Part shown: piece by piece, positions 3,315 to 18,830 of the stretch
How the letters are laid out: each line of letters opens with the position of its first letter
Position numbering within the stretch: the stretch's first letter is position 1
IMG/VR virus record: IMGVR_UViG_3300017917_002374
Location: 124,001-188,000 of that record
DNA length: 64,000 nucleotides
Strand: one strand, 5' to 3'
The notes under the pieces: model-generated
What the model was told of the DNA's origin: nothing
Database searches by the model: none
What the model saw: only the letters and a program-made list of their open reading frames with translations
Made by a program: the position numbers and the translations under genes

Positions 3315-3703
3315 TCAAGGGCATTTACTCAGGCGGCAAGTATGTCCAAGTAAACAATGGACAGACGCCGTCTGTTAGCATATACAACAGTGGCAACAGT
3401 TTTTCCAACGGCGCCCAAGGTTTTGCTGGACAGCTTCGCTACAATACCAACAATCAAAGCATGGAAGTGTTTGACGGCAACATGTGGCAGATAATCAGTA
3501 CCAGTGTTGCACAAGTCGGGCTGTCGCCAATTGCTGAAGAAGCTCTTGATTGGGTACGTCAAAAGATGCAAGAAGAAAAAGACCTGTTCGAACGCATGAA
3601 ACGACATCCTGGACTCAAAGACTCGTATGATCAGTTCAAAGTAATGGATGCACTTACTGCGGAAGAAGAAAAATCAAAATCTGGAGTATACCAACGTGCC
3701 TGA
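3311..3703 (+). CDS. Hypothetical protein
   Basis: ORF coupled by ATGA overlap. Confidence 0.7.
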   Translation: MIKGIYSGGKYVQVNNGQTPSVSIYNSGNSFSNGAQGFAGQLRYNTNNQSMEVFDGNMWQIISTSVAQVGLSPIAEEALDWVRQKMQEEKDLFERMKRHPGLKDSYDQFKVMDALTAEEEKSKSGVYQRA

Positions 3704-5237
3704 ACAAGATAACCTAACAGCCAAACAAAATGATTATGCTGTGTTTCTTCCTGCTATATCTGGCTTCTATGCGACCTTTATAGGAAAACAACGTGTTAAC
3801 AATGACTATGTTAATCCTGCTCGTATGCCTGCGGCATTACAAGACATGGAGCAATTTAATTGGCTCAACAGCCAGCAAGCCCTGTTCCCATACAAATGGA
3901 GCCTCTACTCAGGAGGACACGCCAATCTAGATCTCAACAAACCAGATGCTAGTGAGGATATGGTTCGTAAACGAGAACCTGGTACTGTACTGCTAGGAGA
4001 TTCAGGTGGATTCCAAATTGCAAAAGGTGTATGGGACGGCGACTGGCGAGCAGGGTCAGGTTGTCCGCGAGCACAAAAGAAACGTGAACAGGCATTGGCT
4101 TGGTTAGACGGTATCGCAGATTACGCCATGGTACTAGATATTCCCAGCTTTGTGATCAACGAAAAGAACGGTTACAAGTCAGGTATACGCACACTGGAAG
4201 AAGCAGCAGATGCCACCAAGTACAACAACGAATATTTTATCAAACATCGTAAAGGTATTGCCAATGGTGGTACCAAGTTCTTGAATGTGTTGCAAGGCGG
4301 AAATCATGCTCATGCTGATGAATGGTACGATATGATGAAAGGTTACTGTGATCCTGCTCAGTATCCAGATCGGCACTTTAATGGTTGGGCCATGGGTGGT
4401 CAGAACATGTGTGATGTACACCTGGTGCTGCGACGTCTAGTGGCACTGCGTCACGACAATCTGCTGCAAGAAGGCGTACATGATTGGATGCACTTCTTGG
4501 GTACTAGTAAACTGGAATGGGCACTATTGCTTACAGACATTCAACGTGCAGTAAGAAAGTATATCAATCCTAACTTTACAATCAGTTTTGACTGTGCCAG
4601 TCCTTTCTTGGCCACTGCCAATGGACAGGTGTATCATCATATTGATTTACCACATGATGGCAAATGGTGCTATCGCATGAGTCCTATTGTGGATGATAAA
4701 AAGTATGCCACAGACACAAGACCATTTGGTCAGGCTGTGCTGGCTGACAAACTGATTGATGTGTTTGATGAAAGTCCAATCAGTCGCAACATGATGATGA
4801 AAGATGTGTGCGTGTACAAACCAGGTGATCTAAACAAGAACGGCAAAGAAGGTCGTACCAGTTGGGACAGTTTCAGCTACATGCTGCTCATGGGGCACAA
4901 TGTGTGGACACACATTGAGGCTGTGCAACGAGCCAATAGAGAATATGACAACGGCACTTGGCCCAACATGCTGTGGAACGCACGTGGCGATCATGCCAAG
5001 TTTAGAGACATTGTGGATGCTATCTTTGCAACACCGGATCGTGCAGAAGCAGAAGCCATAATTGAACACTATGATCGCTATTGGATGGACATTGTGGGTA
5101 CCCGCGGGTTCAAAGGCAAGAAGACCAAAAATTCAAACACCATGTTCAATGCACTGTTTGAAGTAGAACATGATCAAATGGAACAAGAAGATTTGGACGA
5201 GTCCAAATTGGACGAATTGGAACTTGCTCAAAATTAA
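3696..5237 (+). CDS. dpdA: TGT-fold 7-deazaguanine DNA transglycosylase (DpdA family, possibly DpdA2-like)
   Basis: TGT motifs DSGGFQI, VLDIP, NVLQGG, GWAMGG, HFLG, SFDCASP. GTG start at 3696 with GGAG RBS. Clustered with folE/queD/queE. Confidence 0.82.
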   Translation: MPEQDNLTAKQNDYAVFLPAISGFYATFIGKQRVNNDYVNPARMPAALQDMEQFNWLNSQQALFPYKWSLYSGGHANLDLNKPDASEDMVRKREPGTVLLGDSGGFQIAKGVWDGDWRAGSGCPRAQKKREQALAWLDGIADYAMVLDIPSFVINEKNGYKSGIRTLEEAADATKYNNEYFIKHRKGIANGGTKFLNVLQGGNHAHADEWYDMMKGYCDPAQYPDRHFNGWAMGGQNMCDVHLVLRRLVALRHDNLLQEGVHDWMHFLGTSKLEWALLLTDIQRAVRKYINPNFTISFDCASPFLATANGQVYHHIDLPHDGKWCYRMSPIVDDKKYATDTRPFGQAVLADKLIDVFDESPISRNMMMKDVCVYKPGDLNKNGKEGRTSWDSFSYMLLMGHNVWTHIEAVQRANREYDNGTWPNMLWNARGDHAKFRDIVDAIFATPDRAEAEAIIEHYDRYWMDIVGTRGFKGKKTKNSNTMFNALFEVEHDQMEQEDLDESKLDELELAQN

Positions 5238-5257
5238 TTTTTAATGCATAATAGTTT

Positions 5258-6079
5258 ATGCTCAACAGTTCTCTTGTAAAGAATATTGCACAGTCTTATG
5301 TGATGTGCAAGTACCTGTCTGCACTATGTGCTAGAATAGGTCCACACAACTACATGAACAGTGTGTTGAGAGTTGAACACGGCACCGGAACTGGCTTTTT
5401 TGGCATTGGAAACAGTGGCAGTACTGACTGTGTTAAAGAACGTTTTCGTGCTACCACTGATGCACTTGATCAAAATTTTGCCACTTGGCAAAAGATTGAT
5501 TTTGTAAGTGAAGGCTGTGTTGGTATAACCATGCGTGACTCGCAAGTACATCGTGTAGAGCATACTAGAGAAGTGATTGATTTATACAAACAGTTTGAAC
5601 AAGAATACATTATTACCGGTCGCAATTTCACTCCTGTTGAATTAGGAACTTGGTTAATTGAAAATCAAATTGTATGCTTGATTCAACAATCAGAACAAAA
5701 ATCCAAGACAGAATATAACGACAATCTTCCCTTTAGCAAATACAGTGCCAAGATATACTATAAAGGTACAGATATTTCTGCATATACCTTGGATCAGATC
5801 AAACAACTGAATAGACAACGGTTTGCTGGGGTAATTAAAGATTTACAACAGTTTAATTTTACAGATTTGCTAGATAAACAATCTAGAAATTTACTGCATG
5901 CCAAGAAAAAACACACACTGCCTCCCATGGACCTAGCTGTGAAATATTTTGATAATGAATTTTATCTGTTAAAAGAACACTATCATCACAAGCTGAACAA
6001 AAGAACAAATCCAAAAGACCGTTGGTACTGTGCCAACGACACTGCCAGATATATTTCATGGCTTGATACTGCGGTCTAA
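5258..6079 (+). CDS. Hypothetical protein
   Basis: 273-aa ORF; exact start uncertain. Confidence 0.65.
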   Translation: MLNSSLVKNIAQSYVMCKYLSALCARIGPHNYMNSVLRVEHGTGTGFFGIGNSGSTDCVKERFRATTDALDQNFATWQKIDFVSEGCVGITMRDSQVHRVEHTREVIDLYKQFEQEYIITGRNFTPVELGTWLIENQIVCLIQQSEQKSKTEYNDNLPFSKYSAKIYYKGTDISAYTLDQIKQLNRQRFAGVIKDLQQFNFTDLLDKQSRNLLHAKKKHTLPPMDLAVKYFDNEFYLLKEHYHHKLNKRTNPKDRWYCANDTARYISWLDTAV

Positions 6080-6103
6080 ATATAATACTCAAAGGATAAT
6101 ATT

Positions 6104-7078: not shown

Positions 7079-7087
7079 GGAGACTAG

Positions 7088-7294: not shown

Positions 7295-7295
7295 T

Positions 7296-7808
7296 ATGGA
7301 TAGACCAGGCCACGGCTTAGCTAAGATGTTTACAGGCATAGAAGTAGAACACACACCAGCACATGGTATGAAAACCTTGTTTGTGGTAGGTGTGCAACCA
7401 AAAGAATTGGTTGAAGCTGCATGCGTAGCCTACAAATGTCAACATGTGTATTTTGGTGCCAATCAAAGTTTTCCAAAATTGCATACCAACAGCAACGATT
7501 GGACAGTTTGGGAAAACATGATTTTTCCATTTCTTTCCCAAGGATATCTCTGCACTCTGGATCTTGATGTGAGTTGTGTAGAAGGCTTGCTGGAAAGCGG
7601 ACTTGTTGAACATCATAATTTTATTCCAATGATTTCAATTAAGTTGCCCTATATCAATCAACTAGGGTATAATGCTACAATCAAACTAGATGATAAAGAT
7701 TTTGCAGCAACCAATCCTGGCGTTTGGTGTCACAGTGTGCATGAGTTACAAAAACGCGAACAATTTACCAGTTGGTCTAAATATAGTCAAGATGAGGTCA
7801 TACGATGA
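7296..7808 (+). CDS. Hypothetical protein in dpd cluster
   Basis: 170-aa ORF between dpdA and dpdL-like gene. Confidence 0.7.
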   Translation: MDRPGHGLAKMFTGIEVEHTPAHGMKTLFVVGVQPKELVEAACVAYKCQHVYFGANQSFPKLHTNSNDWTVWENMIFPFLSQGYLCTLDLDVSCVEGLLESGLVEHHNFIPMISIKLPYINQLGYNATIKLDDKDFAATNPGVWCHSVHELQKREQFTSWSKYSQDEVIR

Positions 7809-8008
7809 AAGAATTCTTAATAAGAGATGAAGCAGCATTTAAATTGCGAGGCACTATGAAACCGTGTTTGCGTCCAGATGATCTCTGGTGCGTAGAATTC
7901 ACCGGCGAACAGTACAATGACAAAGGCGAAATGACTGGTGCCAGCACCTATCAATTTTTTCTAACCAATGAACACATAAGCAAAATGGTACAGGGATTAC
8001 AATCATGA
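7805..8008 (+). CDS. Hypothetical protein
   Basis: ATGA-coupled ORF. Confidence 0.65.
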   Translation: MKEFLIRDEAAFKLRGTMKPCLRPDDLWCVEFTGEQYNDKGEMTGASTYQFFLTNEHISKMVQGLQS

Positions 8009-8451
8009 CCATTCAAGCAGAACGTGAGCAAACGGATATCAATCAACAGGTAGCAGATCGCATGATTTGGGTATCCTTTGCTAAAGAAGGTATCCATAAA
8101 TACCCCGCAGCCTTGGAGGATCCAAAACTTGCAGACGTATCTTTTCTGGGTTATCCCCATCGTCATATGTTTCACTTCCGGGTGTCAATCTCGGTCTTTC
8201 ACAATGACCGTGATATCGAATTCATTCAATTCAAACGGTGGCTTGAATCATTGTATTCAGGGCAAGAAAATTGTTTGCGACTGGACTACAAAAGCTGTGA
8301 AATGATTGCAGATGATCTATATGTCCAAATTAATAGTCGTTATCCAGGCAGACATGTTATAATCAGTGTAAGCGAAGATAATGAAAACGGTTGTGAGATT
8401 GTGTATCGCGATCCACGCACACCAGAAAAAACTTTTCAACATCCAGTCTAA
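8005..8451 (+). CDS. dpdL: QueD-paralog T-fold protein, DpdL-like (putative CDG decarboxylase)
   Basis: LGYPHRHMF matches LxxxHRHxF. DRDIEFIQFK and SCEMIADDLY parallel QueD DFxxLK and xxENxA motifs. A canonical queD is present separately. Confidence 0.7.
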   Translation: MTIQAEREQTDINQQVADRMIWVSFAKEGIHKYPAALEDPKLADVSFLGYPHRHMFHFRVSISVFHNDRDIEFIQFKRWLESLYSGQENCLRLDYKSCEMIADDLYVQINSRYPGRHVIISVSEDNENGCEIVYRDPRTPEKTFQHPV

Positions 8452-8460: not shown

Positions 8461-8739
8461 ATGATGGCTCAGCCAAAGTGGCTCAAAAAGTATTTGACCA
8501 TGCGTCCCGAAGTATCCAAGATCTACGATGATCTTGAGCAGTATCGCGAGTTCTGCGTTAATTATGGTCATGTGTTTGACGAACGTGATCTTTACAATGA
8601 ACGTAACACCAGTTATCAAGATTTCGTAAGACATCAAAGTGGGAAACATGTAAAGAATCGTTGGTATCAACGAGACGATGATCGTCCTCGTGTGCCAAGA
8701 GGACACAACAACTATCGCACAAGGAATAACAATGCGTAA
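8461..8739 (+). CDS. Hypothetical protein
   Basis: AGGAG RBS, 92 aa. Confidence 0.7.
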   Translation: MMAQPKWLKKYLTMRPEVSKIYDDLEQYREFCVNYGHVFDERDLYNERNTSYQDFVRHQSGKHVKNRWYQRDDDRPRVPRGHNNYRTRNNNA

Positions 8740-9910
8740 GCTCTACTACATGGGGCTTGAACCTTACAAAGCACGATACACCTTACAGTTACAAGAGTGG
8801 AATCGTGCTGTGTTTGAACGGCGCGGTATCAACTATGAAATTGTTACTGGAGAAACTCTTAGTAATGATCAAGCTATTGTAACAGGACAGGTGCTGGATG
8901 CACATGGTCGCACATACTTTGGCATGAGTCAGTTGATGAACCTTATTCGTAAAATGAAAGCTGGAGAGCTTAATCATGCAGATGTTGTATACTTTGAAGA
9001 CATGTTTCAACCCGGCATCGAGAGCCTACCTTACATTCTCAATCAAATTGATCCTGTTAACCGTCCTAGGATTTTTGTGCGTTGTCTTGCTCAATCCATT
9101 GACCCAGATGATTTCGTACATGTATGGGGCATGGGCGAATGGATGGGCCATTATGAAAAGATGGTGGACAGTTTTGTAGATGGTGTATTGGCTACCAACG
9201 AAGAAATGGTCATGCACATGAAGGTGGCAGGTTGGAAGAGCAAGATCTACAACATTTCAGGCTTGGCCTTTGGTAAAGACGAAGTTCGCTCGCGTGTGCC
9301 CGGTGAACTGCGTCCATTCAACGAACGTAAGATGCGTGTGGGCTTTGCTGCACGTTGGGATCAAGAAAAGCAACCAGATTTCTTCATGGATCTCATTGAA
9401 GCATATCACGAACGTCATCCAGGATCTGGCATTGAGTTCTGTTTGTTTTCTGGTGCTAAACTAAAAAGCAACAACGACAGCTACATGGCTCGTACTCGTG
9501 CAATGCAAGCTGAAGGCAAGTTGACCATACATGAGGATCTGGAAAAGAATGAATACTACGAGCTTCTTAACGATACTCGTGTACTATTTAATTGTGCTTT
9601 GCAAGATTGGGTCAGCAACACTGTGTCCGAAGCCGATACACTGGGAGCAAATGTTCTCTATCCTGCGTATAGGAGTTTTCCTGAGTCTTTTGCTAATGAT
9701 CATGAACGTCTTTATGTACCCTGGTCAATAGACGATGCTCTGGACAAACTGGAAAAGCTACTGCGGGCACCGCATCCTAATCAAGGCAAAATCAGTGACT
9801 GGACCAATGGCACTGTGGACCGTATCCTTGATATCATTACAGGGCAAGGTGAGCAATGGCAGCGCATGAACACAGACTATCGCAAACACACACACGAAAG
9901 CAAGTTCTAA
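8732..9910 (+). CDS. GT-B glycosyltransferase (GT4-like)
   Basis: GFAARWDQEK..F and DWVSNTVSEA (E-x7-E-like region), YPAYRSFPE; ATG at 8732. Confidence 0.75.
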   Translation: MRKLYYMGLEPYKARYTLQLQEWNRAVFERRGINYEIVTGETLSNDQAIVTGQVLDAHGRTYFGMSQLMNLIRKMKAGELNHADVVYFEDMFQPGIESLPYILNQIDPVNRPRIFVRCLAQSIDPDDFVHVWGMGEWMGHYEKMVDSFVDGVLATNEEMVMHMKVAGWKSKIYNISGLAFGKDEVRSRVPGELRPFNERKMRVGFAARWDQEKQPDFFMDLIEAYHERHPGSGIEFCLFSGAKLKSNNDSYMARTRAMQAEGKLTIHEDLEKNEYYELLNDTRVLFNCALQDWVSNTVSEADTLGANVLYPAYRSFPESFANDHERLYVPWSIDDALDKLEKLLRAPHPNQGKISDWTNGTVDRILDIITGQGEQWQRMNTDYRKHTHESKF

Positions 9911-10146: not shown

Positions 10147-10336
10147 AACAATCAGCGATAAACTGACCAAAGTTGGTGAATCATTCACAGTGAACATGTA
10201 CGATAATGGATACATGATTGAAGTAAGTGGAAGAAACAGCCAAGGTGATTGGGCAACTGCCAAAATCATGGTATCAAATCTCAACGATCTAACCACACTG
10301 ATTGCCGAAGCAGCAGAAATGGAACGGGACAATTAA
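10118..10336 (+). CDS. Hypothetical protein
   Basis: AAGGA RBS, ATG at 10118. Confidence 0.65.
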   Translation: MTKKSPGAVKTISDKLTKVGESFTVNMYDNGYMIEVSGRNSQGDWATAKIMVSNLNDLTTLIAEAAEMERDN

Positions 10337-11334
10337 TGTCTACCACTGTGTTAGTAACAGGTGCCACTGGCTATATTGGTAGTCATGTGTGCAAACATCT
10401 ACTTGATGCAGGTTATAGAGTAGTAGGTGTGGATCGTGTGAGTAGAGATCATGCTCTTCCTTACATGACTTTTTTAATCAATGAAGACTATTACAGCGAC
10501 GGTGTAGTTAATTTTTTAAATAGCGAAACTGTGCATGCGGTGGTTCATTGTGCAGGTACCAGTTTGGTAGGTCCTAGTGTGTTGGATCCTGCAGAATACT
10601 ATACCAACAACGTGGCCAAAACAGCTATGTTTCTGGATGTGCTGCGTCGTTTGCCTAATCCACCTGCGTTTGTGTTTTCTAGCAGTGCCAGTGTGTATGG
10701 ATCACCAGATGTGGATATCATCACTGAAGACACACCATGGAATCCTGTGAGTCCATATGGTCAGACCAAGGCCATGATTGAACTCATGCTCACTGACATG
10801 TGCAAAGCATACAACATGGCAGCCATGAGCTTGCGTTACTTCAATGCTTGCGGCGCAGATGTTGATTCTGGTGCACTAGGACAAGCACCAGGTGCCACAC
10901 ATATCATAGCCAGATTGTTAGAAAGCATAAGAGATCGTAAACAGTTTATTTTATATGGCAATGACTACAACACTCCTGATGGCAGTTGCATTAGAGATTA
11001 TGTGCATGTAGATGATCTTGCTCGTGCTCATGTATATGCCATACAGTATCTATTGAGTTTTGAACACAATCAGCATTACATGGTAAATCTAGGCAGTGGT
11101 CGCGGATACAGTAATGTGGATGTGATTGCTGCTGTGGCAAGACACATTGGACCTGTTGACTTGCTTGAAGGTTCTAGACGTGCTGGCGATCCAGATCGTT
11201 TGGTAGCCAGCAATGATCTGGCTCAAGCCTATCTAGGTTGGTCACCAGAACACTCAGATTTAGAAACCATTATTACCAGTGCGTGGCGTTGGTATAATAA
11301 CACATCAAATCTTGTTGACACAGCATCTAAATAA
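10336..11334 (+). CDS. galE: UDP-glucose 4-epimerase
   Basis: TGATGYIGSH, FSSSASVYG, YGQTK, LRYFNACGA, DGSCIRDYVHV, RRAGDP. Confidence 0.92.
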   Translation: MSTTVLVTGATGYIGSHVCKHLLDAGYRVVGVDRVSRDHALPYMTFLINEDYYSDGVVNFLNSETVHAVVHCAGTSLVGPSVLDPAEYYTNNVAKTAMFLDVLRRLPNPPAFVFSSSASVYGSPDVDIITEDTPWNPVSPYGQTKAMIELMLTDMCKAYNMAAMSLRYFNACGADVDSGALGQAPGATHIIARLLESIRDRKQFILYGNDYNTPDGSCIRDYVHVDDLARAHVYAIQYLLSFEHNQHYMVNLGSGRGYSNVDVIAAVARHIGPVDLLEGSRRAGDPDRLVASNDLAQAYLGWSPEHSDLETIITSAWRWYNNTSNLVDTASK

Positions 11335-11381: not shown

Positions 11382-12149
11382 ATGGTATACAATAAAATAT
11401 ATGTAAGTCACGATGAAGAAACAGCACTTGACGCAATGGCAGGTGATGCTGGTTACGAAATAGGCCAAGCTCACAAACATCTCGCATTTAAAATGCGTCG
11501 CGATGGTAAAAGATTCTGGGCCGGTGACAATATTAGCGAATATGTTGATGGCTACATGAAAGCACAGTTGATTGACGAAGCCACAGCAGCATTTGAACAG
11601 GTACTAGACACACTGTTGATTGATCGCGAAAACGATCCTAATTCAAAAGGCACAGCACGACGTCTTGCCAAGATGTACTTTAACGAAATCATGGCAGGTA
11701 GATATGATCCAGCCCCTGATGCAACCAGTTTCCCAAATCATACAGAAGATCGTTATGCAGGCATGCTGGTTGTTCGTAGCGAATTGCGCAGCATGTGTAG
11801 CCATCATCATCAACCAGTTAATGGAGTAGCATATATTGGAATCATTGCTGCCGATCAGCTGATTGGTCTAAGCAAGTACACTCGTATTGCTCAATGGTGC
11901 GCTCGGCGTGGTACACTTCAAGAAGAACTGTGCAATGATATTGCCAGAGAAATCATGAAAGCCACAGGCAGTAAAGATGTGGGCGTTTATATTCAAGCCA
12001 CACATGGTTGTTGCGAAAATCGTGGTATTATGGCGCACTCCAGTCTTACACAAACCACAGTTCTCACAGGTGTATTCAAAGATGATCCTGCGGTAAAGAA
12101 AGAGTTCATGGACAATATCAAACTGCAACAAGAATTTGCACCGCGATAA
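11382..12149 (+). CDS. folE: GTP cyclohydrolase I
   Basis: GTARRLAKMY, SMCSHHHQP, GLSKYTRI, LQEEL, HGCCENRG. Confidence 0.96.
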   Translation: MVYNKIYVSHDEETALDAMAGDAGYEIGQAHKHLAFKMRRDGKRFWAGDNISEYVDGYMKAQLIDEATAAFEQVLDTLLIDRENDPNSKGTARRLAKMYFNEIMAGRYDPAPDATSFPNHTEDRYAGMLVVRSELRSMCSHHHQPVNGVAYIGIIAADQLIGLSKYTRIAQWCARRGTLQEELCNDIAREIMKATGSKDVGVYIQATHGCCENRGIMAHSSLTQTTVLTGVFKDDPAVKKEFMDNIKLQQEFAPR

Positions 12150-13307: not shown

Positions 13308-13903
13308 TGGGTGCCATGCGAGAAAAAGATTCTGCAGACTTTGATCTAGAAGCATTCATTGATCTGTTTGATGAGGCAATTACCAGCGACGATCCAAATG
13401 TTCAAAAAACTCTACAGCATCTAATGGTTATTGCCGCGTTGGCTCGCAATCATAATCAGCACAATCACCGCAATGGCCCTCTGCGCAGACTGTTTGAAGA
13501 CGTTCGCGACATAAACAACAGACTTGGCCATCTAGAAACCAATCTTAGAGGTTATCAAAAAGGCTATGGTCCAGTTCCTACGCCATATCCTAGTATGCCT
13601 TTGAATCCAGTTCCTATTTGGACTGCTCCTACTACAGGCACACGCTGGCCACCTTCCCCAGGAACTTACCCACCAGGCACACTGTTTGCACAAGGTGTGG
13701 GCGGTCCAGTTGGGAGTGGCGCAGCACTAGCTGGTGCCCAAAGCACTACCAGCTACACCTGGGATCCTGTGGCGGCTAACAGCATTACTAAGAAAATCAA
13801 CAGCGGAACTCCTGGAGGTATTGCAGAACGTGTGGACGAATTGCTCAAGGATAACAAATACAAAGGCAGCAGTGTAGGAGCACCAGATGTTAAAACTGCT
13901 TGA
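13307..13903 (+). CDS. Hypothetical protein with Pro-rich linker
   Basis: TAATG-coupled ORF. Confidence 0.7.
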   Translation: MGAMREKDSADFDLEAFIDLFDEAITSDDPNVQKTLQHLMVIAALARNHNQHNHRNGPLRRLFEDVRDINNRLGHLETNLRGYQKGYGPVPTPYPSMPLNPVPIWTAPTTGTRWPPSPGTYPPGTLFAQGVGGPVGSGAALAGAQSTTSYTWDPVAANSITKKINSGTPGGIAERVDELLKDNKYKGSSVGAPDVKTA

Positions 13904-14372
13904 GCGTTTGGGCCGCAAGCGTATCATTTATGATCGCATCAACAACGAGCCATATCTTGAACGCTACTATCTGTTCTTGAAAGAAAGAAAACGTTTTCCG
14001 TTTAATGTGTTTCTGCACAAATTCTTAAAAGGCGATCCAGATGATGTACATGATCATCCATGGCCATATGCCACACTGATTTTAAAGGGCGGTTATTATG
14101 AATATGTTCCAGTCTTTAATAGCAAAGGTCTTAAAACTCATGAACTTTGCCATTGGCGTGGGCCCGGACATTTCCGTATTTGTAAGCCTGAGTCTTTTCA
14201 TCGCATTGAACTAAAACCTGGTGTGACTGCATGGACACTGTTCATGCCAGGTCCGCACAAACGAGAGTGGGGATTCCTTACCGGCAAAGATCCATTGAGA
14301 AATTGGGAACACAATGAAAGTTATCTCACCAGGCGCAGTGGCTCTGCGCCCAATCAAAATCACAGTGAATAA
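13887..14372 (+). CDS. Cupin-fold phage protein
   Basis: FLHKF...HDHPW...GGYYE...FHRI...WTLF cupin metal motifs. Confidence 0.7.
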   Translation: MLKLLERLGRKRIIYDRINNEPYLERYYLFLKERKRFPFNVFLHKFLKGDPDDVHDHPWPYATLILKGGYYEYVPVFNSKGLKTHELCHWRGPGHFRICKPESFHRIELKPGVTAWTLFMPGPHKREWGFLTGKDPLRNWEHNESYLTRRSGSAPNQNHSE

Positions 14373-14385
14373 ACTAAACCAAGAA

Positions 14386-14667
14386 ATGGCGGATTGGTGG
14401 ATCATGCAAGGTGCCGAAGCACAGGAAATACATGATCCTTATTGGACGCATTTTCGTGGAAACGTGGTGGACAAACATTATCGTATTCGAATGCCAGGTC
14501 TAGGCGGCAAGTGGAGTCATAAGTTTAATGATGGCAGTGGCATACACCTAATTCATTTGCCAGAAATCTATGCCAGTACTGCCAGTTTGTTTTGTTTAAA
14601 ATTTTTTGATGCTATAATATCACATAACATAGAGGTTCCAAAACATGAAGATTCATTACAACAATAA
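14386..14667 (+). CDS. Hypothetical protein
   Basis: ORF from ATG 14386. Confidence 0.55.
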   Translation: MADWWIMQGAEAQEIHDPYWTHFRGNVVDKHYRIRMPGLGGKWSHKFNDGSGIHLIHLPEIYASTASLFCLKFFDAIISHNIEVPKHEDSLQQ

Positions 14668-15193
14668 ACATTTACACGCATGGTTGCACACGATCATGCG
14701 TCAAATGCAACACTACAATTTCAAACCAGATTACATTGTGGGTATTACTCGTGGAGGATTAATTCCTGCTACTATGTTAAGTCATTATCTTGATGTGCCC
14801 ATGCACACACTGGATGTGAGTTTTAGAGACAGCGGCACAGGACCAGAAAGCAATCTCTGGATGGCCGAAGATGCTTTTGGCTATGTGAACAAAGAGGATC
14901 GTACAGACGAAGGCACAGTTAGTGACCCTAAACTACGCAAGAACATTTTGATTGTGGATGATATTAACGACAGTGGTCGTACACTGCAATGGATCAAGGA
15001 CGATTGGGAAAGTGGTTGCATGCCTCGCAGTGAAGACTGGAATGACGTTTGGCATCATAATGTACAATTTGCGGTAATGGTAGACAACACCGCTAGTAAC
15101 TTTAAAGGTGTTGATTTTTACGGTACAGAAATTAACAAGCAAGAAACACCTGCCTGGGTAGTGTTTCCTTGGGAAAACTGGTGGGAGAATTAA
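14645..15193 (+). CDS. Purine phosphoribosyltransferase (Gpt-like)
   Basis: VGITRGGLIPA, PRPP motif ILIVDDINDSGRTL, WVVFPWE. Confidence 0.88.
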   Translation: MKIHYNNKHLHAWLHTIMRQMQHYNFKPDYIVGITRGGLIPATMLSHYLDVPMHTLDVSFRDSGTGPESNLWMAEDAFGYVNKEDRTDEGTVSDPKLRKNILIVDDINDSGRTLQWIKDDWESGCMPRSEDWNDVWHHNVQFAVMVDNTASNFKGVDFYGTEINKQETPAWVVFPWENWWEN

Positions 15194-15643
15194 ATGCTGA
15201 ATGGTAAACGAGTAGGCTTTACAGCCAGTACATTTGATCTATTGCATGCAGGACATGTGGCCATGTTGCGCGAAGCCAAAGACAAATGTGAGTACCTAAT
15301 ATGTGCATTACAAAATGATCCTACTATGGATAGACCAAACAAAAATCGTCCTGTGCAGAGTATTGTGGAACGGCAGTTGCAACTGATTGGCTGCAAGTAC
15401 GTGGATGAAGTTTGGGTGTACAATACAGAAAAAGATCTAGAGGATCTATTGCTCACACTACCAATAGATGTTAGAATACTTGGCGTTGAATACGAAGGCA
15501 AGGAGTTTACTGGTCGTGAAATATGTCATAAACGTAATATTGAACTTTACTTTAACGGTCGTGATCATAGCTTTAGTAGCAGCGAGCTTCGTCAGCGTGT
15601 GGCATCAGCTGAGGATTCTAAGAAGAGATTAAACGAACAATAA
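15194..15643 (+). CDS. Cytidylyltransferase (TagD-like)
   Basis: STFDLLHAGH (HxGH), PVQSIVER, SSSELR. Confidence 0.88.
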   Translation: MLNGKRVGFTASTFDLLHAGHVAMLREAKDKCEYLICALQNDPTMDRPNKNRPVQSIVERQLQLIGCKYVDEVWVYNTEKDLEDLLLTLPIDVRILGVEYEGKEFTGREICHKRNIELYFNGRDHSFSSSELRQRVASAEDSKKRLNEQ

Positions 15644-15728
15644 ATATTAGTCTCAGCGGTCTCAAGGCATTCATCCCGCTTTACAAATTCTGCATGCCAT
15701 TGCTAACTTTCAGGAGATAACAATGGCA
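15641..15728 (+). promoter_or_regulatory. TAAATA promoter plus pseudoknotted 5' UTR of queD (riboswitch candidate)
   Basis: P1 AGCGG/CCGCT, P2 GGCAT/ATGCC, alternative stem TGCCATTG/CAATGGCA covering the ATG. Confidence 0.6.
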
Positions 15729-16208
15729 AAATTTTACTCAACAAAAACATATGGTAATGACAGAGGTCTGTCATGTTGCTTTAGACAATGGCGTGCCACA
15801 CACAGTCATTGCTCCACACTACACGGTTATTCAATTGGCATTAAACTGATCTTTGAATGCGACACATTAGATGACAAAAACTGGTGCATGGACTTTGGAG
15901 GGCTCAAAGAATTCAAAGCATGGGCCGATCACATGTTTGATCATACATTGGTCATTGCAGAAGATGATCCTCATTTGGAAACATTCAAACAACTAAATGA
16001 AATTACGGGCGGATTCAACGAAAGCGGAGTGTGTGATTTGCGTATTGTGCCTGGAGTAGGCTGTGAAATGTTTGCCAAATTGTGCTATGACAAAATGGCT
16101 GAGCTATTAGCCAGCGGCACGATGCGTTATCCAATCAATCCGACTGTGCGTGTTAAAAGCGTTGAAGTGTTTGAACATGGTGCTAATTCAGCCACATACG
16201 AAGGATAA
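15723..16208 (+). CDS. queD: 6-carboxy-5,6,7,8-tetrahydropterin synthase
   Basis: HCSTLHGYS, MDFGGLK, DHMFDH, GCEMFA, VEVFEHGANSA. Confidence 0.93.
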   Translation: MAKFYSTKTYGNDRGLSCCFRQWRATHSHCSTLHGYSIGIKLIFECDTLDDKNWCMDFGGLKEFKAWADHMFDHTLVIAEDDPHLETFKQLNEITGGFNESGVCDLRIVPGVGCEMFAKLCYDKMAELLASGTMRYPINPTVRVKSVEVFEHGANSATYEG

Positions 16209-16242: not shown

Positions 16243-16271
16243 TTGACATTCGGGCTGTTTTGTTTTATAAT
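16243..16271 (+). promoter_or_regulatory. sigma70 promoter
   Basis: TTGACA-N17-TATAAT. Confidence 0.88.
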
Positions 16272-16301
16272 GTTGTTTCAATATTTCTTGAGGATTCTAT
16301 C

Positions 16302-16625: not shown

Positions 16626-16628
16626 TTA

Positions 16629-17069
16629 ATGAACATGCATAAACGTATTTTTGATGGCCCAGACCATTTAGACGAAAGCGATGCACCATGGGACGACACA
16701 GTGAGAAAAGACTTTCACGTGGCGGTGTTTAACGATAAGTACCCTGTGACCTCGGGTCATATGCTGTTTGTTCCTCAGTACAATAGCATCAGTGTACTCA
16801 AAGAAACCTTTGAGGATGCATTTGATTACGGAAAACAAAAAGTTGACACAGGGGAATGGGACGGCTTCAACATCGGACTTAACTATGGCGAAGCCGCGGG
16901 ACAGACTGTGTCATGGCCTCATATTCATCTTATACCCCGTAGAAAAGGCGATGTGCCGGATCCAGTAGGTGGTGTACGGAATACAATTCCAGGCAAAGGC
17001 AACTATAGAAAGATGCCAACCACAGTTCAAACAGTAGTTGGCGACAGTGAAGGCGGAGACATAGATTAA
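16629..17069 (+). CDS. HIT-family nucleotide hydrolase
   Basis: YPVTSGH, GEAAGQTVSWPHIHLIPR histidine triad. Confidence 0.92.
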   Translation: MNMHKRIFDGPDHLDESDAPWDDTVRKDFHVAVFNDKYPVTSGHMLFVPQYNSISVLKETFEDAFDYGKQKVDTGEWDGFNIGLNYGEAAGQTVSWPHIHLIPRRKGDVPDPVGGVRNTIPGKGNYRKMPTTVQTVVGDSEGGDID

Positions 17070-17950
17070 TGATAATTGTAACAGGAGATCGTGGATTCAT
17101 TGGCAGTGAGTTAAAGCAGTATCTTGAGTCAGTTGGACACAAGGTTCACGGTCTTGATTGGGCCACTAGAGGCAAAACCTATACTGTAGATGAACCAGTT
17201 GAATGGATCTATCATATGGGTGCAGTAAGCAGTACCGACGCAGGCGATTGGCAGGAACTGGTTACAAAAAACATTCAAGACACACAGGCATGGATACGTG
17301 CAGCCGAGCAATGGAACTGTGGTATAACCTATGCCAGCAGTGCTAGTACATATGGTCCATGGACCAACAGTCCAGAATGGGGACCGGTGCAACCACAACA
17401 CTTGTATGGAGTTAGCAAGCTGGCAATTGACAATTGGTGTGCAGAACAATCATTTAGCGTACCTGTGCAAGGTGTGAGATTTTTTAATGTGTACGGACGT
17501 AATGAACAACACAAACGCCAGCCCAGTCCAGTCAGACGTTATCTTGATCAAGCAGCTACCAAGCGCGAACTCACAGTATGGCATCACAATGGTCGTTATG
17601 GATCAAGAGATTTTATCAGTATAGATGATACTATTCATGCCATGGAACAGTTACGTGCTGCTAGAGTAAGTGGAGTGTACAACATAGGCACAGGCAAAAC
17701 TGATAGTTTTTATGACATTGCCAAAACCTGTCAACGACTGGCAGGAGTGACCAATTGTAAGTTGGCGGTGGTCCCCATGCCTGAACACATGTTGGCTACT
17801 TATCAATGGGAAAGCTGTGCTAATTTGGACAAATTAAGGCAAGTTATTCCTGATTGGAATCCAGAAAACATACATGACTGGCTTGAACACAACTGGCAAA
17901 CCCTGTATAATAAAACAATTGAGGACTTAAACAATGAAATTCAAAATTAG
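17069..17950 (+). CDS. NAD-dependent epimerase, HldD/RfaD-like
   Basis: GDRGFIGS, HMGAVSST, YASSASTYG, YGVSK, RFFNVYG, SRDFI, YQWESCA. Confidence 0.82.
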   Translation: MIIVTGDRGFIGSELKQYLESVGHKVHGLDWATRGKTYTVDEPVEWIYHMGAVSSTDAGDWQELVTKNIQDTQAWIRAAEQWNCGITYASSASTYGPWTNSPEWGPVQPQHLYGVSKLAIDNWCAEQSFSVPVQGVRFFNVYGRNEQHKRQPSPVRRYLDQAATKRELTVWHHNGRYGSRDFISIDDTIHAMEQLRAARVSGVYNIGTGKTDSFYDIAKTCQRLAGVTNCKLAVVPMPEHMLATYQWESCANLDKLRQVIPDWNPENIHDWLEHNWQTLYNKTIEDLNNEIQN

Positions 17951-18830
17951 TGAAATTTTTTATAGTACGCAAGGCGAAGGTCGCTATGTAGGTGTGCCTA
18001 GCATATTCATGCGCACGTTTGGTTGTAATTTTAAATGTGAAGGCTTTGGTTGCAAGCCCGGAGAAAAAAGCAAAGAACGTGAGCAGGTTTTAGAGTTAAT
18101 ACATGCTGAGCCAGCAAAATATCAAAAATTTGAAGATCTTCCTTTAGTGTCAACTGGCTGTGACAGTTATGCTAGTTGGGATCCAAAATTTAAAGACTAC
18201 AGTCCTAGTATAGACAACGATACGATTGTAGAACGTATGATGTCTTTATTACCAAACGGACAATGGCAACAGCCTAACGGTAATAACATACATCTAGTAA
18301 TCACTGGTGGAGAGCCACTCCTAGGTTGGCAGCGTAACTATCCTTCTTTACTAGATCATCGTGGCATGTTTGATCTTGCCAATCTTACATTTGAAACCAA
18401 CGGGACTCAAGAACTTTCGGAAGATTTTTATGATTGGATACAGGACTGGCATGCTGATCCTGATTTTATTCAAGAACATCTAGGACAATTTAGAGAATTA
18501 GTGTTTAGTGTAAGTCCTAAGTTGAGTGCCAGTGGTGAAAGCTGGGCAGATGCAATCAAACCTGATATAATCAAACAGTATCAGGAGGTAGGACTAACCT
18601 ATCTTAAATTTGTAGTGTCAACTGCGGAAGACTTTCAAGAAGTAGACCAAGCAGTTGCTGAATATCGCAATGTTGGGTTCATGGGTAGTGTGTATGTGAT
18701 GCCTGTGGGAGGTACACTAGAAAGTTATAATCAGAATCGTGTGCATGTTGCAGACGAAGCACTCAAACGCGGTTACTATTACAGCCCAAGGCTTCACGTG
18801 GATCTGTGGGGCAACGGGTGGGGCAAATGA
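17934..18830 (+). CDS. queE: 7-carboxy-7-deazaguanine synthase (radical SAM)
   Basis: EIFYSTQGEG, RTFGCNFKC...CDS, ITGGEPLL, FETNGT, SVSPKL, RLHVDLWG. Confidence 0.93.
   Translation: MKFKISEIFYSTQGEGRYVGVPSIFMRTFGCNFKCEGFGCKPGEKSKEREQVLELIHAEPAKYQKFEDLPLVSTGCDSYASWDPKFKDYSPSIDNDTIVERMMSLLPNGQWQQPNGNNIHLVITGGEPLLGWQRNYPSLLDHRGMFDLANLTFETNGTQELSEDFYDWIQDWHADPDFIQEHLGQFRELVFSVSPKLSASGESWADAIKPDIIKQYQEVGLTYLKFVVSTAEDFQEVDQAVAEYRNVGFMGSVYVMPVGGTLESYNQNRVHVADEALKRGYYYSPRLHVDLWGNGWGK

What the first reader, a model, noticed from the sequence alone, without database searches (positions are those of the whole stretch)
3696..18830. dpdA-folE-queD-queE plus DpdL-like gene and no linked queC: predicted unsubstituted 7-deazaguanine (dDG) DNA
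Seen: TGT-fold DpdA, FolE, QueD, QueE and a second T-fold gene (8005-8451) carrying LGYPHRHMF; no QueC/QueF within the cluster. Known: FolE-QueD-QueE makes CDG, and a QueD paralog with an LxxxHRHxF motif (DpdL) has been described as a CDG decarboxylase giving dDG (recalled from literature, not verified by search). Inference: genomic G is partly exchanged for 7-deazaguanine as anti-restriction armour.
Basis: partly seen in the sequence, partly recalled or inferred. Interest (0 to 1): 0.65.

Follow-up and report, generated by a model that had tools for sequence, protein, structure and literature searches.

The report
Jumbo-phage 7-deazaguanine DNA modification module
A 355-kb freshwater jumbo phage carries the gene set that replaces guanine in its own DNA with a 7-deazaguanine base, probably to escape host restriction enzymes, and comparison with other phages shows two extra conserved genes that published accounts of this pathway do not mention.

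Summary
Window 3696-18830 encodes a guanine-transglycosylase-fold protein (DpdA-like), DpdL, FolE, QueD and QueE, all on the + strand inside the DNA-replication module of a complete 354,959-bp phage genome. No QueC or QueF lies in the cluster.

The DpdA-like protein matches nothing in Pfam, PHROGs, NCBIfam or PDB sequence profiles. Its AlphaFold model (pLDDT 91) matches only the TGT/DpdA superfamily, and the catalytic Asp motifs are invariant.

The 8005-8451 protein is a true DpdL: 56% identical to Acidovorax phage ACP17 DpdL and 33% to Cellulophaga phage phiST DpdL, with the LxxxHRHxF motif.

A QueC-family ORF at 49885-50520 is rare, divergent and sits in a lipid-type module, so it is probably unrelated.

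A deazaguanine-modified genome is well supported. Pseudomonas phage PA5oct has the same DpdA-like type and shows G-dependent restriction resistance. Plain dDG is only the leading guess, because DpdL's decarboxylase activity has never been shown.

New here: a GT4-like glycosyltransferase (8732-9910) and a Gpt-like purine phosphoribosyltransferase (14645-15193) co-occur with DpdL across unrelated phage lineages. They are candidates for the missing enzymes. The final base could be more elaborate than dDG.

The parts
78..2513 (+). Family B DNA polymerase. It anchors the replication module in which the modification genes are embedded.
   Evidence: PF00136 at 116 bits and PF03104 at 58 bits. It is 50% identical to Phosso PolB and 52% to PA5oct PolB. 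Present upstream in 74 of 80 related loci.
3696..5237 (+). DpdA-like guanine transglycosylase (TGT-fold TIM barrel) of a divergent clade. The predicted role is base exchange in DNA.
   Evidence: The ORF starts at 3648 and the likely start is the GTG at 3696. No HMM hit in any library. The AF2 model has pLDDT 91. Foldseek and VIA-align place it in the TGT/DpdA superfamily only. In the viral structure library it hits phage TGT/DpdA-like proteins, including a Vibrio phage nt-1 protein at 1e-8 and a 259-aa phiST protein at 0.02. D118 (GDSGGFQ), D164 (LD.P) and D315 (SFDCASPF) are invariant or nearly so across 70 diverse homologs. hhalign to the ACP17 protein I take to be its DpdA gives prob 96.4%, E 1e-9.
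7296..7808 (+). p170, a conserved protein of unknown function between the DpdA-like gene and DpdL.
   Evidence: Present in 69 of 80 related loci. ACP17 has a homolog directly upstream of the gene I take to be its dpdA (33% identity, E 7e-18). The AF2 model has pLDDT 90.6 but no clear PDB fold match; the best Z is 6.8. No Pfam, PHROG or Atlas hit.
8005..8451 (+). DpdL, a QueD paralog proposed to be a 7-carboxy-7-deazaguanine decarboxylase.
   Evidence: The LGYPHRHMF motif is present. Identity is 64% to Phosso, 59% to RHph_I1_18, 56% to ACP17, 62% to PA5oct and 33% to phiST DpdL. phrog_17812 at 5.6e-36. At least 593 relatives in IMG/VR.
8461..8739 (+). p92, a small conserved protein of unknown function between DpdL and the glycosyltransferase.
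   Evidence: Present in 67 of 80 related loci, always directly after DpdL. No family hit.
8732..9910 (+). GT4-like (GT-B) glycosyltransferase, a conserved neighbour of DpdL.
   Evidence: The Atlas feature search places it with viral Glycos_transf_1/GT4 clusters, and the record starts at residue 19 of the ORF that begins at 8678. A sub-threshold PF13524 hit. A D-x7-E counterpart of the GT4 E-x7-E motif aligns with homologs. It is 63-64% identical to the Synechococcus phage BUCT-ZZ01 protein next to that phage's DpdL. Homologs lie beside DpdL in ACP17, PA5oct and Phosso, and within 3 kb in BUDD, X1 and BCSR5. Present in 56 of 80 related loci, with a median 336 bp after DpdL.
10249..11334 (+). 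UDP-glucose 4-epimerase (GalE). It probably supplies the sugar donor for the adjacent glycosyltransferase.
   Evidence: TIGR01179 galE at 309 bits, above the 262 cut-off. It follows the GT-like gene within 2.5 kb in 27 of 43 loci that have room.
11382..12149 (+). GTP cyclohydrolase I (FolE), the first step from GTP.
   Evidence: PF01227 at 136.7 bits. phrog_2197 at 8e-45. It is 57% identical to Phosso FolE and 39% to phiST FolE. NCBIfam equivalog cut-offs are not reached.
13887..14372 (+). Cupin-type protein. It recurs in the module and its role is unknown.
   Evidence: phrog_4786 at 1e-33. It forms a cupin-PRT-HIT block in many related loci.
14645..15193 (+). Gpt/XGPRT-like purine phosphoribosyltransferase.
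   Evidence: PF00156 at 52 bits. The best NCBIfam hit is xanthine PRTase, below cut-off. The best PDB sequence hits are purine PRTases 1vdm, 4z1o and yeast HGPRT. The PRPP motif VDDINDSGRT is present. Only 21 of 50,697 phage records hold a homolog, and 17 of those carry DpdL: the phiST group, BUCT-ZZ01 and the PA5oct group.
15194..15643 (+). Small nucleotidyltransferase, like the HldE C-terminal domain or a cytidylyltransferase.
   Evidence: PF01467 at 44.5 bits. phrog_7878 at 3e-32. TIGR02199 at 68 bits, below cut-off. Recurs in the module in 22 of 80 loci.
15723..16208 (+). QueD (6-carboxytetrahydropterin synthase).
   Evidence: PF01242 at 60.8 bits. phrog_2389 at 3e-37. It is 41% identical to phiST QueD and 47% to BUCT-ZZ01 QueD. 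The motif is CxxxHGY, as in the QueD of phiST and ACP17.
16629..17069 (+). HIT-family nucleotide hydrolase or transferase. It recurs in the module.
   Evidence: PF01230 at 33.6 bits. Present in 23 of 80 loci, usually directly after the PRTase.
17069..17950 (+). SDR sugar-nucleotide epimerase, like ADP-heptose 6-epimerase.
   Evidence: PF01370 at 94 bits. TIGR02197 at 173 bits, below the 275 cut-off.
17934..18830 (+). QueE (radical-SAM 7-carboxy-7-deazaguanine synthase).
   Evidence: phrog_2076 at 2.4e-50 over the full length. N-terminal QueE signatures appear in five NCBIfam models, all below cut-off. It is 44% identical to BUCT-ZZ01 QueE and 32% to PA5oct QueE.

Best explanation
This is a phage-encoded DNA hypermodification module that replaces genomic guanine with a 7-deazaguanine base.

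The first three steps rest on established family functions. FolE converts GTP to dihydroneopterin triphosphate. QueD makes 6-carboxytetrahydropterin. QueE makes 7-carboxy-7-deazaguanine (CDG).

No functional QueC is linked, so CDG is not turned into preQ0. By analogy with phiST, DpdL removes the carboxyl group to give 7-deazaguanine (DG). This step is inferred.

The divergent TGT-fold DpdA-like enzyme then exchanges G in newly made phage DNA for that base, which makes G-containing restriction sites uncuttable. This step is also inferred.

The Gpt-like PRTase most likely salvages the guanine that each exchange releases. Guanine plus PRPP gives GMP, then GTP, which feeds FolE again and closes the cycle. 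This is inference.

The GT4-like glycosyltransferase, its GalE, p170 and p92 are conserved parts of this version of the module, and their role is open. Either they are needed for the pathway to work, or they elaborate the base beyond plain dDG.
For: - The gene set and order are shown.
- The TGT fold and conserved catalytic Asp residues of the DpdA-like protein are shown. It is distantly homologous to the ACP17 protein I take to be its DpdA.
- DpdL family membership and its motif are shown.
- The literature reports that phiST, with FolE, QueD, QueE, DpdL and DpdA3 and no QueC, has dDG in its DNA and resists restriction (PMC10516641).
- PA5oct has the same DpdA-like type (33-36% identity), DpdL, QueE, GT-like and PRT in the same order next to PolB. 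[quoted passage not shown]
- QueC is absent from five cultured DpdL phages and from two near-complete relatives. QueF is absent from this genome.
- The window's QueC-like ORF is rare (132 homologs against more than 7,600 clusters for the DpdA-like protein). In the other contigs examined it lies among GT2, radical-SAM, fatty-acid desaturase, ketoacyl-synthase and ACP genes.
- The module is embedded between PolB and RNaseH in 80 related loci, which fits action on replicating DNA.
- PRT and GT both co-occur with DpdL.
Against: - No chemistry was measured, so the base is inferred.
- DpdL's decarboxylase activity has never been demonstrated. dpdA plus dpdL from ACP17 and phiST gave no dDG in E. coli.
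- The DpdA-like protein is not recognised by any sequence model. No conserved Cys set that could form the Zn site of classical TGT is seen in the alignment. It could not be placed in DpdA1-4.
- A glycosyltransferase conserved next to DpdL has no role in a plain dDG pathway.
- The guanine-salvage role of the PRTase is only the most economical reading.
- Sugar-nucleotide genes also occur elsewhere in the window, so some of those in the cluster may be unrelated auxiliary genes.
Confidence: 0.6

Rival explanations
1. The end product is not plain dDG. The GT4-like glycosyltransferase, supplied by the adjacent GalE, acts on the deazaguanine base or nucleotide, or is an obligatory partner of DpdL or DpdA. 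DpdL+GT phages would then carry a more elaborate base, for example a glycosylated 7-deazaguanine derivative, different from the base in phiST.
For: - The GT-like gene lies a median 336 bp after DpdL in 56 of 80 related loci.
- It lies beside or within 3 kb of DpdL in six cultured lineages besides this one: ACP17, the PA5oct group, Phosso, BUDD/X1, BCSR5 and BUCT-ZZ01. 18 of 23 phage records with this GT also have DpdL.
- The catalytic E/D-x7-E motif is kept.
- GalE follows it in 27 of 43 loci.
- The genome has only one ThyA, a true thymidylate synthase, so there is no ThyA-type hydroxymethylase to make a hydroxymethyl-pyrimidine acceptor.
- dpdA plus dpdL alone failed in E. coli for ACP17, which has the GT between them.
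- Nucleases that sense hypermodified DNA target PA5oct.
Against: - 7-Deazaguanine has no obvious acceptor group, and I know of no glycosylated deazapurine in DNA.
- phiST makes dDG without this GT.
- 13 related loci with at least 4 kb downstream of DpdL lack the GT.
- Jumbo phages often carry glycan-related auxiliary genes, and this window has others.
Confidence: 0.22
2. The route is pre-replicative. The Gpt-like PRTase couples DG or CDG to PRPP, as ToyH and TubE do in toyocamycin and tubercidin biosynthesis. The nucleotide is converted to 7-deaza-dGTP and the phage polymerase incorporates it. The TGT-like protein would play a secondary role or none.
For: - The PRTase is almost confined to DpdL phages: 17 of the 21 phage records that hold it. 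That includes phiST, where replacement of G is complete.
- It sits inside the cluster in this phage, in PA5oct and in BUCT-ZZ01.
- HIT and nucleotidyltransferase genes accompany it.
- phiST has a MazG and a kinase-like ATPase beside DpdL.
- The use of PRTases in deazapurine nucleoside pathways is established knowledge, recalled and not searched here.
Against: - A TGT-fold enzyme with intact catalytic Asp residues is present in 74 of 74 loci. Every deazaguanine phage studied so far has one.
- No dedicated dGTP-clearing enzyme lies in the cluster. The only MazG is far away in the genome.
- Guanine salvage explains the PRTase more simply.
Confidence: 0.1
3. The QueC-family ORF at 49885-50520 completes the pathway, so the base inserted is preQ0 or 7-amido-7-deazaguanine rather than DG.
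For: The ORF passes the Pfam QueC gathering score (37 against 22 bits). It has a PP-loop SGGxDS motif and a C-terminal Cys-rich motif.
Against: - Only the last 56 or so positions of the model match. TIGR00364 scores 28 against a cut-off of 150.
- No bona fide QueC appears among PDB hits.
- The family is small (132 homologs, nearest 61% identical) and absent from the 80 related loci. Near-complete relatives show only weak N-terminal PP-loop hits and no QueC.
- Its neighbours here and elsewhere are GT2, radical-SAM, desaturase, ketoacyl-synthase and ACP genes.
- DpdL is conserved throughout the clade.
Confidence: 0.05
4. The TGT-like enzyme modifies tRNA (queuosine-type or archaeosine-type) or the genes simply boost host pterin or queuosine metabolism, and the DNA is unmodified.
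For: The closest solved structures are tRNA enzymes. FolE and QueD alone could serve pterin synthesis.
Against: - The module lies in the replication block with PolB, clamp and RNaseH.
- DpdL is known only from DNA-modifying phages.
- PA5oct DNA is restriction-resistant at G-containing sites.
- The top solved match, archaeosine TGT (577 residues), aligns only over its first ~350 residues, so its C-terminal extension has no counterpart in the model.
Confidence: 0.03

Closest known systems
Cellulophaga phage phiST dDG system (FolE, QueD, QueE, DpdL, DpdA3), Cui et al., NAR 2023, PMC10516641
   Same: Both have FolE, QueD (with the CxxxHGY motif), QueE and DpdL (with LxxxHRHxF), and neither has QueC. 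Both have a Gpt-like PRTase in the genome. phiST DNA was shown to contain dDG.
   Different: The transglycosylase differs. phiST has a 259-aa protein that I take to be its DpdA3, and it is only marginally similar to the 513-aa protein here (hhalign prob 73%; Foldseek E 0.02). phiST has no GT4-like, p170 or p92 homolog in the stretch examined. It has a MazG and an ATPase next to DpdL. DpdL identity is only 33%.
Pseudomonas jumbo phage PA5oct (Wroclawvirus) replication-module cluster
   Same: It has the same DpdA-like clade (33-36% identity over about 500 aa). The order matches: PolB, clamp-like, DpdA-like, GT-like, DpdL, PRT, QueE, RNaseH. It has no QueC. Experiments indicate modified G.
   Different: In the record, the DpdA-like, GT-like and DpdL genes are annotated only as hypothetical proteins. 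The GT belongs to the ACP17/Phosso branch (24% identity to the one here). The DpdL motif is HFH rather than HRH. The region lacks the GalE, HldE-like, HldD-like and HIT genes. The chemical identity of its base is unpublished as far as I could find.
Acidovorax phage ACP17 and Synechococcus phage BUCT-ZZ01 DpdL clusters
   Same: Both have DpdL next to a GT4-like gene, plus FolE, QueD and QueE. BUCT-ZZ01 also has an XGPRT in one contiguous block. ACP17 shares p170. The BUCT-ZZ01 GT is 63-64% identical to the one here.
   Different: The proteins I take to be their DpdA (about 420 aa) form another branch, seen here only by profile comparison (prob 96%). They are T4-like phages of about 156 kb, not 355-kb jumbo phages.
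Bacterial Dpd system and phage DpdA1/DpdA2 (preQ0, dG+ or dPreQ1 insertion); DpdA structure 7ui4
   Same: They share the TGT-fold base-exchange enzyme (Z 16.1 to 7ui4) and the FolE-QueD-QueE trunk.
   Different: Those systems need QueC and insert preQ0-derived bases at low levels. This protein has no sequence-level match to them and no conserved Cys set for a Zn site.
Toyocamycin and tubercidin biosynthesis (ToyH/TubE PRTases on deazapurine bases), recalled from knowledge
   Same: They combine FolE, QueD and QueE homologs with a type I phosphoribosyltransferase. The tubercidin pathway also removes the C7 carboxyl group.
   Different: Those are bacterial secondary-metabolite pathways that make free nucleosides. 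They have no TGT-like enzyme. The decarboxylase there is not a T-fold protein.

Membership tests
DpdA (DNA 7-deazaguanine transglycosylase, TGT superfamily) | TGT-type TIM-barrel fold | tested here: met
   The AF2 model has pLDDT 91.2. Foldseek PDB top 50 hits are all TGT, E about 2e-7. VIA-align gives arcTGT 18.9, QTRT2 17.8, TGT 17.4, DpdA 7ui4 16.1 and Cap10 15.2, against 11.4 for the next unrelated barrel.
DpdA (DNA 7-deazaguanine transglycosylase, TGT superfamily) | Catalytic and substrate-binding Asp residues (the DSGGFQ-type motif and the nucleophile Asp in an xFDxxxP-type motif) | tested here: met
   GDSGGFQ (D118), LD.P (D164) and SFDCASPF (D315) are present. D118 and D315 are invariant and D164 is at least 90% conserved in 70 homologs down to 26% identity. 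The same motifs align with the ACP17 protein I take to be its DpdA. Equivalence to Z. mobilis TGT D102, D156 and D280 is from memory.
DpdA (DNA 7-deazaguanine transglycosylase, TGT superfamily) | Recognition by a family sequence model (Pfam TGT PF01702 or DUF6610; PHROGs; NCBIfam) | tested here: not met
   No hit in Pfam, PHROGs or NCBIfam. PF01702 finds nothing in the whole genome at E up to 1. The family profile against PDB sequences gives TGT only at E 1.8.
DpdA (DNA 7-deazaguanine transglycosylase, TGT superfamily) | Zn-binding Cys/His cluster of classical TGT and bDpdA | tested here: not met
   No Cys column is invariant or nearly invariant in the 70-sequence alignment. Whether this feature defines the phage subfamilies is unclear.
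DpdA (DNA 7-deazaguanine transglycosylase, TGT superfamily) | Assignment to a named subfamily (bDpdA, DpdA1-4) | tested here: inconclusive
   tblastn finds only the PA5oct group, Phosso and Vibrio phage 2.275.O. hhalign gives 96% to the ACP17 candidate DpdA and 73% to the phiST candidate DpdA3. In the viral structure library, a nt-1 protein scores 1e-8 and the phiST protein 0.02. The paper's subfamily table was not available.
DpdA (DNA 7-deazaguanine transglycosylase, TGT superfamily) | Acts on DNA and inserts a 7-deazaguanine base | not testable with these tools
   Only context is available: the replication module and the restriction phenotype of PA5oct.
DpdL (proposed CDG decarboxylase) | Homology to the proteins named DpdL in phiST and ACP17 | tested here: met
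   56% identity to ACP17 (E 3e-44) and 33% to phiST (E 2e-15). They align over the full length.
DpdL (proposed CDG decarboxylase) | LxxxHRHxF in place of the QueD motif CxxxHGH (loss of the catalytic Cys) | tested here: met
   LGYPHRHMF is present. L, the two H and F are invariant across six DpdL sequences. The definition is quoted from PMC10516641.
DpdL (proposed CDG decarboxylase) | Occurs with DpdA, FolE, QueD and QueE but without QueC | tested here: met
   The one QueC-family ORF in the genome is judged unrelated.
DpdL (proposed CDG decarboxylase) | T-fold / QueD kinship | tested here: inconclusive
   No Pfam PTPS hit. hhalign of an 82-sequence DpdL profile against a QueD profile gives prob 70% over 40 C-terminal columns. 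The paper reports HHpred 99.9% for phiST DpdL.
DpdL (proposed CDG decarboxylase) | Decarboxylates CDG to 7-deazaguanine | not testable with these tools
   This is also unproven in the literature. The heterologous test was negative.
FolE / QueD / QueE (CDG trunk pathway) | Family-model matches above curated thresholds | tested here: met
   FolE: PF01227 at 137 bits against a cut-off of 27. QueD: PF01242 at 61 against 22. QueE: phrog_2076 at 2.4e-50 over the full length. NCBIfam equivalog cut-offs are not reached for any of the three, as is usual for divergent phage copies.
FolE / QueD / QueE (CDG trunk pathway) | QueD CxxxHGH motif; QueE radical-SAM Cys triad | tested here: inconclusive
   QueD has CSTLHGY, the same variant as in phiST and ACP17. 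QueE has C31-x3-C35 with the third Cys displaced, as in PA5oct and phiST. No Pfam Radical_SAM hit.
QueC (preQ0 synthase), for ORF 49885-50520 | Full-length match to the QueC equivalog and a deazaguanine gene context | tested here: not met
   TIGR00364 scores 28 against 150. Pfam matches model positions 153-208 only. The context is lipid-type genes here and in the other contigs examined.
GT4 glycosyltransferase (GT-B, retaining), for ORF 8732-9910 | GT4 family signature and the E-x7-E catalytic motif | tested here: inconclusive
   The Atlas feature search places it with clusters carrying PF00534/PF13692/GT4. PF13524 scores 19.8 against a cut-off of 25. A D-x7-E motif aligns with E-x7-E in homologs. 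Fold not predicted.
Gpt/XGPRT (6-oxopurine phosphoribosyltransferase), for ORF 14645-15193 | Type I PRTase fold with a PRPP loop, closest to purine PRTases | tested here: met
   PF00156 at 52 bits against 26. The PRPP motif is present. The top PDB sequence hits are purine PRTases. The NCBIfam xanthine PRTase equivalog cut-off is not reached (37 against 138), so base specificity is open.

The most novel reading that the evidence does not exclude
DpdL-type phages fall into two kinds. The common kind is seen here and in PA5oct, ACP17, Phosso, BUCT-ZZ01 and thousands of freshwater jumbo-phage contigs. It needs a dedicated GT4 glycosyltransferase and a purine PRTase in addition to DpdA and DpdL. 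Under this reading its DNA carries a 7-deazaguanine derivative not yet described, for example a sugar-bearing one. Alternatively, the base is made by a nucleotide-level route, not simple insertion of free DG.
Probability: 0.25. Interest if true: 0.85.

Novelty: new variant of a known kind. Interest (0 to 1): 0.6.

Why it matters
7-Deazaguanine DNA is one of the main phage counter-measures against restriction enzymes. The dDG branch is its least understood part. DpdL has never been shown to work, and the pathway could not be rebuilt in E. coli.

This locus and its relatives add three things.
1. The DpdL module is a core feature of a very large, uncultured clade of about 350-kb freshwater jumbo phages. 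The DpdA-like protein has more than 7,600 clusters at 90% identity and 942 representatives at 50%.
2. Its transglycosylase belongs to a clade that no current HMM library recognises, so surveys of DNA modification miss it.
3. A GT4 glycosyltransferase and a Gpt-like PRTase track DpdL across unrelated phages. This gives concrete candidates for the missing enzymes and a direct experiment in cultured phages (PA5oct, ACP17, BUCT-ZZ01).

The guanine-salvage idea also suggests how a phage can afford to replace about 1.5e5 guanines per genome copy.

Tried and rejected
- Sequence-model identification of the DpdA-like protein failed. Pfam, PHROGs and NCBIfam gave no hit, and a 19-sequence and a 70-sequence profile against PDB sequences gave nothing significant. 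Only structure prediction resolved it.
- Megablast of the 15-kb cluster against 50,697 phage records found no match.
- p170 as a degenerate QueE is rejected. QueE chains appeared at Z 5-6 in the fold search, but hhalign gave prob 0.2%. p170 is left as an unknown fold and function.
- The QueC-like ORF as the pathway's preQ0 synthase is rejected as unlikely.
- A hydroxymethyl-pyrimidine acceptor for the GT has no support. The genome has a single ThyA, which is a true thymidylate synthase with DHFR beside it.
- The more distant GT relatives in Xanthomonas/Erwinia 227-kb phages sit with GlmS and a deacetylase, not with DpdL. The association therefore holds for the closer branches only.
- The supplementary tables of the NAR 2023 paper, which hold the subfamily assignments, were not available.
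- Read laying and complex prediction were not used. Contig-level reads cannot show base modification, and I make no claim of protein-protein binding.

Full report
**Setting.** The window is bases 124001-188000 of a 354,959-bp virus record with direct terminal repeats, rated complete. All genes in the first 22 kb lie on the + strand. The family B polymerase at 78-2513 is at most 50% identical to any cultured phage. The nearest are Sinorhizobium phage Phosso, Agrobacterium Atu_ph07, a 349-kb Vibrio phage, and the GAP32/CBB group. This is therefore an uncultured jumbo phage of the wider T4-related giant group. Near-identical DNA is found in freshwater, lake, pond, river and some soil metagenomes from at least nine studies.

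**The observation.** Four of the five named enzymes are confirmed by ordinary family scans.
- FolE at 11382-12149: PF01227 at 137 bits.
- QueD at 15723-16208: PF01242 at 61 bits and phrog_2389.
- QueE at 17934-18830: phrog_2076 at 2.4e-50.
- The small protein at 8005-8451: phrog_17812 and the LGYPHRHMF string.

The fifth, the 'TGT-fold DpdA', is not visible to any sequence model. Pfam, PHROGs and NCBIfam gave no hit, and two family profiles against PDB sequences gave nothing significant. PF01702 finds nothing anywhere in the genome.

I collected diverse homologs: 942 representatives at 50% identity with E up to 0.001. I aligned 70 of them and predicted the structure, which has pLDDT 91.2 and pTM 0.90. 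The top 50 Foldseek hits in the PDB are all tRNA-guanine transglycosylase (E about 2e-7). An independent all-against-representatives alignment puts archaeosine TGT, QTRT2, bacterial TGT, the DNA preQ0 insertase DpdA (7ui4) and Cap10 at Z 15-19. The next, unrelated TIM barrels score Z 11. In the viral structure library it matches phage proteins annotated as TGT or queuine tRNA-ribosyltransferase, a Vibrio phage nt-1 protein and, weakly, a 259-aa phiST protein.

The Asp of GDSGGFQ (D118) and the Asp of SFDCASPF (D315) are invariant, and the LD.P Asp (D164) is at least 90% conserved, in homologs down to 26% identity. The same motifs align with the ACP17 protein I take to be its DpdA (hhalign prob 96%).

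**DpdL.** The NAR 2023 paper (PMC10516641) defines DpdL as a QueD paralog whose CxxxHGH motif has become LxxxHRHxF. It is found in phages that have DpdA, FolE, QueD and QueE but no QueC, and it is proposed to decarboxylate CDG. The window protein is 56% identical to ACP17 DpdL and 33% to phiST DpdL, and it shares the invariant L, H, H and F. Membership is solid.

Kinship to QueD could be shown only weakly here (hhalign prob 70% over the C-terminal 40 columns). The activity itself is unproven. [quoted passage not shown]

**QueC.** No QueC or QueF lies in the cluster, and the genome has no QueF. A QueC-family ORF does lie at 49885-50520. It has the PP-loop and the C-terminal Cys-rich motif, but it matches only the last quarter of the QueC models: Pfam 37 bits, and TIGR00364 at 28 against a cut-off of 150. 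No true QueC structure is among its PDB sequence hits. It has only 132 homologs, the nearest at 61% identity. By contrast, the DpdA-like protein and the glycosyltransferase each have thousands of clusters, with relatives at 98% identity.

In this window and in the other contigs examined it sits among GT2, radical-SAM, fatty-acid desaturase, ketoacyl-synthase and ACP genes. Two near-complete relatives of the phage (99% and 95% complete) show only weak N-terminal PP-loop hits and no QueC, and five cultured DpdL phages have no hit at all. I conclude that it belongs to another, lipid-type module and that the deazaguanine pathway here is QueC-independent.

**Comparative anatomy.** Eighty IMG/VR loci with DpdL 61-85% identical to this one share the following order: PolB, p243, DpdA-like, p170, DpdL, p92, GT-like, GalE-like, FolE, then cupin/PRT/HIT, then QueD, QueE, p125 and RNaseH. 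p243 matches the protein annotated as a sliding clamp in Phosso. The DpdA-like gene is upstream in 74 of 74 loci with room.

Pseudomonas phage PA5oct has the same backbone: PolB, clamp-like, DpdA-like, GT-like, DpdL, PRT, QueE and RNaseH. There these genes are annotated mostly as hypothetical. [quoted passage not shown] That preprint names only QueE and a PTPS as the responsible genes (PMC12191111). This is the best experimental support for function of this type of module.

**Two unreported companions.**

The first is a GT4-like glycosyltransferase at 8732-9910. The support comes from Atlas feature neighbours carrying Glycos_transf_1/GT4 and from a D-x7-E motif aligned to the E-x7-E of homologs. 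It lies a median 336 bp after DpdL in 56 of 80 loci. Homologs lie beside DpdL in ACP17, PA5oct, Phosso and Synechococcus phage BUCT-ZZ01, and within 3 kb in Xanthomonas phages BUDD and X1 and Burkholderia phage BCSR5. 18 of the 23 phage records with this GT also carry DpdL. A true GalE (TIGR01179 above cut-off) follows it in 27 of 43 loci.

The second is a Gpt-like purine PRTase at 14645-15193. It has the PRPP motif, and its best PDB and NCBIfam relatives are purine or xanthine PRTases. It has homologs in only 21 of 50,697 phage records, and 17 of them are DpdL phages. These include phiST, the one phage with proven dDG.

BUCT-ZZ01 packs QueE, XGPRT, QueD, FolE, an ACP17-type candidate DpdA, DpdL and the GT into one contiguous block. 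The NAR 2023 paper does not mention a glycosyltransferase or a phosphoribosyltransferase, and a literature search found no paper linking them.

p170 (7296-7808) is a third conserved companion. It is also present in ACP17 directly upstream of the gene I take to be its dpdA. Its confident model has no clear structural relative.

**Mechanism.** The trunk from GTP to CDG follows from the established functions of FolE, QueD and QueE. Without QueC, the DpdL step to 7-deazaguanine and its insertion by the DpdA-like enzyme are inferred from phiST. That the target is DNA is inferred from the replication-module context and the PA5oct phenotype.

For the PRTase I favour guanine salvage. Each exchange frees one guanine and each new DG costs one GTP, so guanine plus PRPP, then GMP, then GTP closes the loop. 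At about 42% GC, a 355-kb genome holds roughly 1.5e5 guanines. This is reasoning, not evidence. The alternative is that the PRTase makes a deazaguanine nucleotide, as in toyocamycin and tubercidin pathways, and I keep it as a rival.

The glycosyltransferase has no place in a plain dDG scheme. The genome's only ThyA homolog is a true thymidylate synthase with DHFR next to it, so there is no ThyA-type hydroxymethylase to make a hydroxymethyl-pyrimidine for it to decorate. Either it acts on the deazaguanine system or it is a glycan-related auxiliary gene that happens to be tightly linked. Its recurrence next to DpdL in seven lineages, counting this one, argues for the former. Its absence from phiST and from 13 related loci argues that it is not indispensable.

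**Verdict.** It is over-specific about the product.

The system is a new variant of a known kind for three reasons:
- its transglycosylase clade is unrecognised by current models;
- it sits in a very abundant freshwater jumbo-phage lineage;
- it carries conserved GT4, Gpt-like, p170 and p92 companions that offer a testable explanation for why the dDG pathway has not been reconstituted.

Noticed in passing
window 44000-64000: GC content drops from about 0.42-0.47 to about 0.32-0.36 at roughly 44 kb and stays low to the end of the window. Gene orientation becomes mixed after 52.6 kb. This looks like a compositionally distinct block of accessory genes.
   Followed up: no
window 46320-54080: A lipid-like or unknown metabolic module. 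It holds a GT2 (46320-47978), a twitch-domain radical-SAM protein (47971-49341; NF033640 at 305 bits), a 184-aa unknown, the QueC-family PP-loop protein (49885-50520), two fatty-acid desaturases (50504-51256 and 51870-52637) and a B12-binding radical-SAM methyltransferase-like gene on the minus strand (52632-54080). Relatives of the QueC-like gene elsewhere sit beside ketoacyl-synthase and ACP genes.
   Followed up: partly
window 7296-7808: p170 is conserved in 69 of 80 related loci and in ACP17. It gives a confident AF2 model (pLDDT 90.6) with no PDB match above Z 6.8, so it may be an undescribed fold linked to the DpdA/DpdL genes.
   Followed up: partly
window 40246-41666: DHFR (40246-40749) and a true thymidylate synthase (40749-41666, above the NCBIfam equivalog cut-offs) are adjacent. 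It is the only ThyA homolog in the genome.
   Followed up: yes
window 35415-37923: A MoxR-type AAA ATPase (35415-36524) is followed by a DUF2201 metallopeptidase/VWA-like protein (36601-37923).
   Followed up: no
window 5258-7078 and 19635-20798: Lineage-specific insertions lie inside and just past the conserved module. They are a 273-aa ORF with no homolog in the 80 related loci, an FkbM-family methyltransferase (6104-7078, found in 1 of 80 loci), and a putative sugar O-methyltransferase-like protein just past QueE (19635-20798, TIGR04371 at its cut-off).
   Followed up: no
L004 (PA5oct) 2831-8057: In PA5oct the PolB gene is split by a Hef-like homing endonuclease, giving two 'DNA polymerase' CDS. 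The window's PolB is a single intact ORF.
   Followed up: no
window 15723-16208 and related loci: All phage QueD copies examined, including those of phiST and ACP17, carry CxxxHGY in place of the textbook CxxxHGH motif.
   Followed up: partly
L005 (Rhizobium phage RHph_I1_18) 9971-11232: In this DpdL phage, which lacks the GT and PRT, a macro-domain ('Appr-1-p processing') protein directly follows DpdL, and no gene in the 20-kb stretch is annotated as a DpdA or TGT.
   Followed up: no
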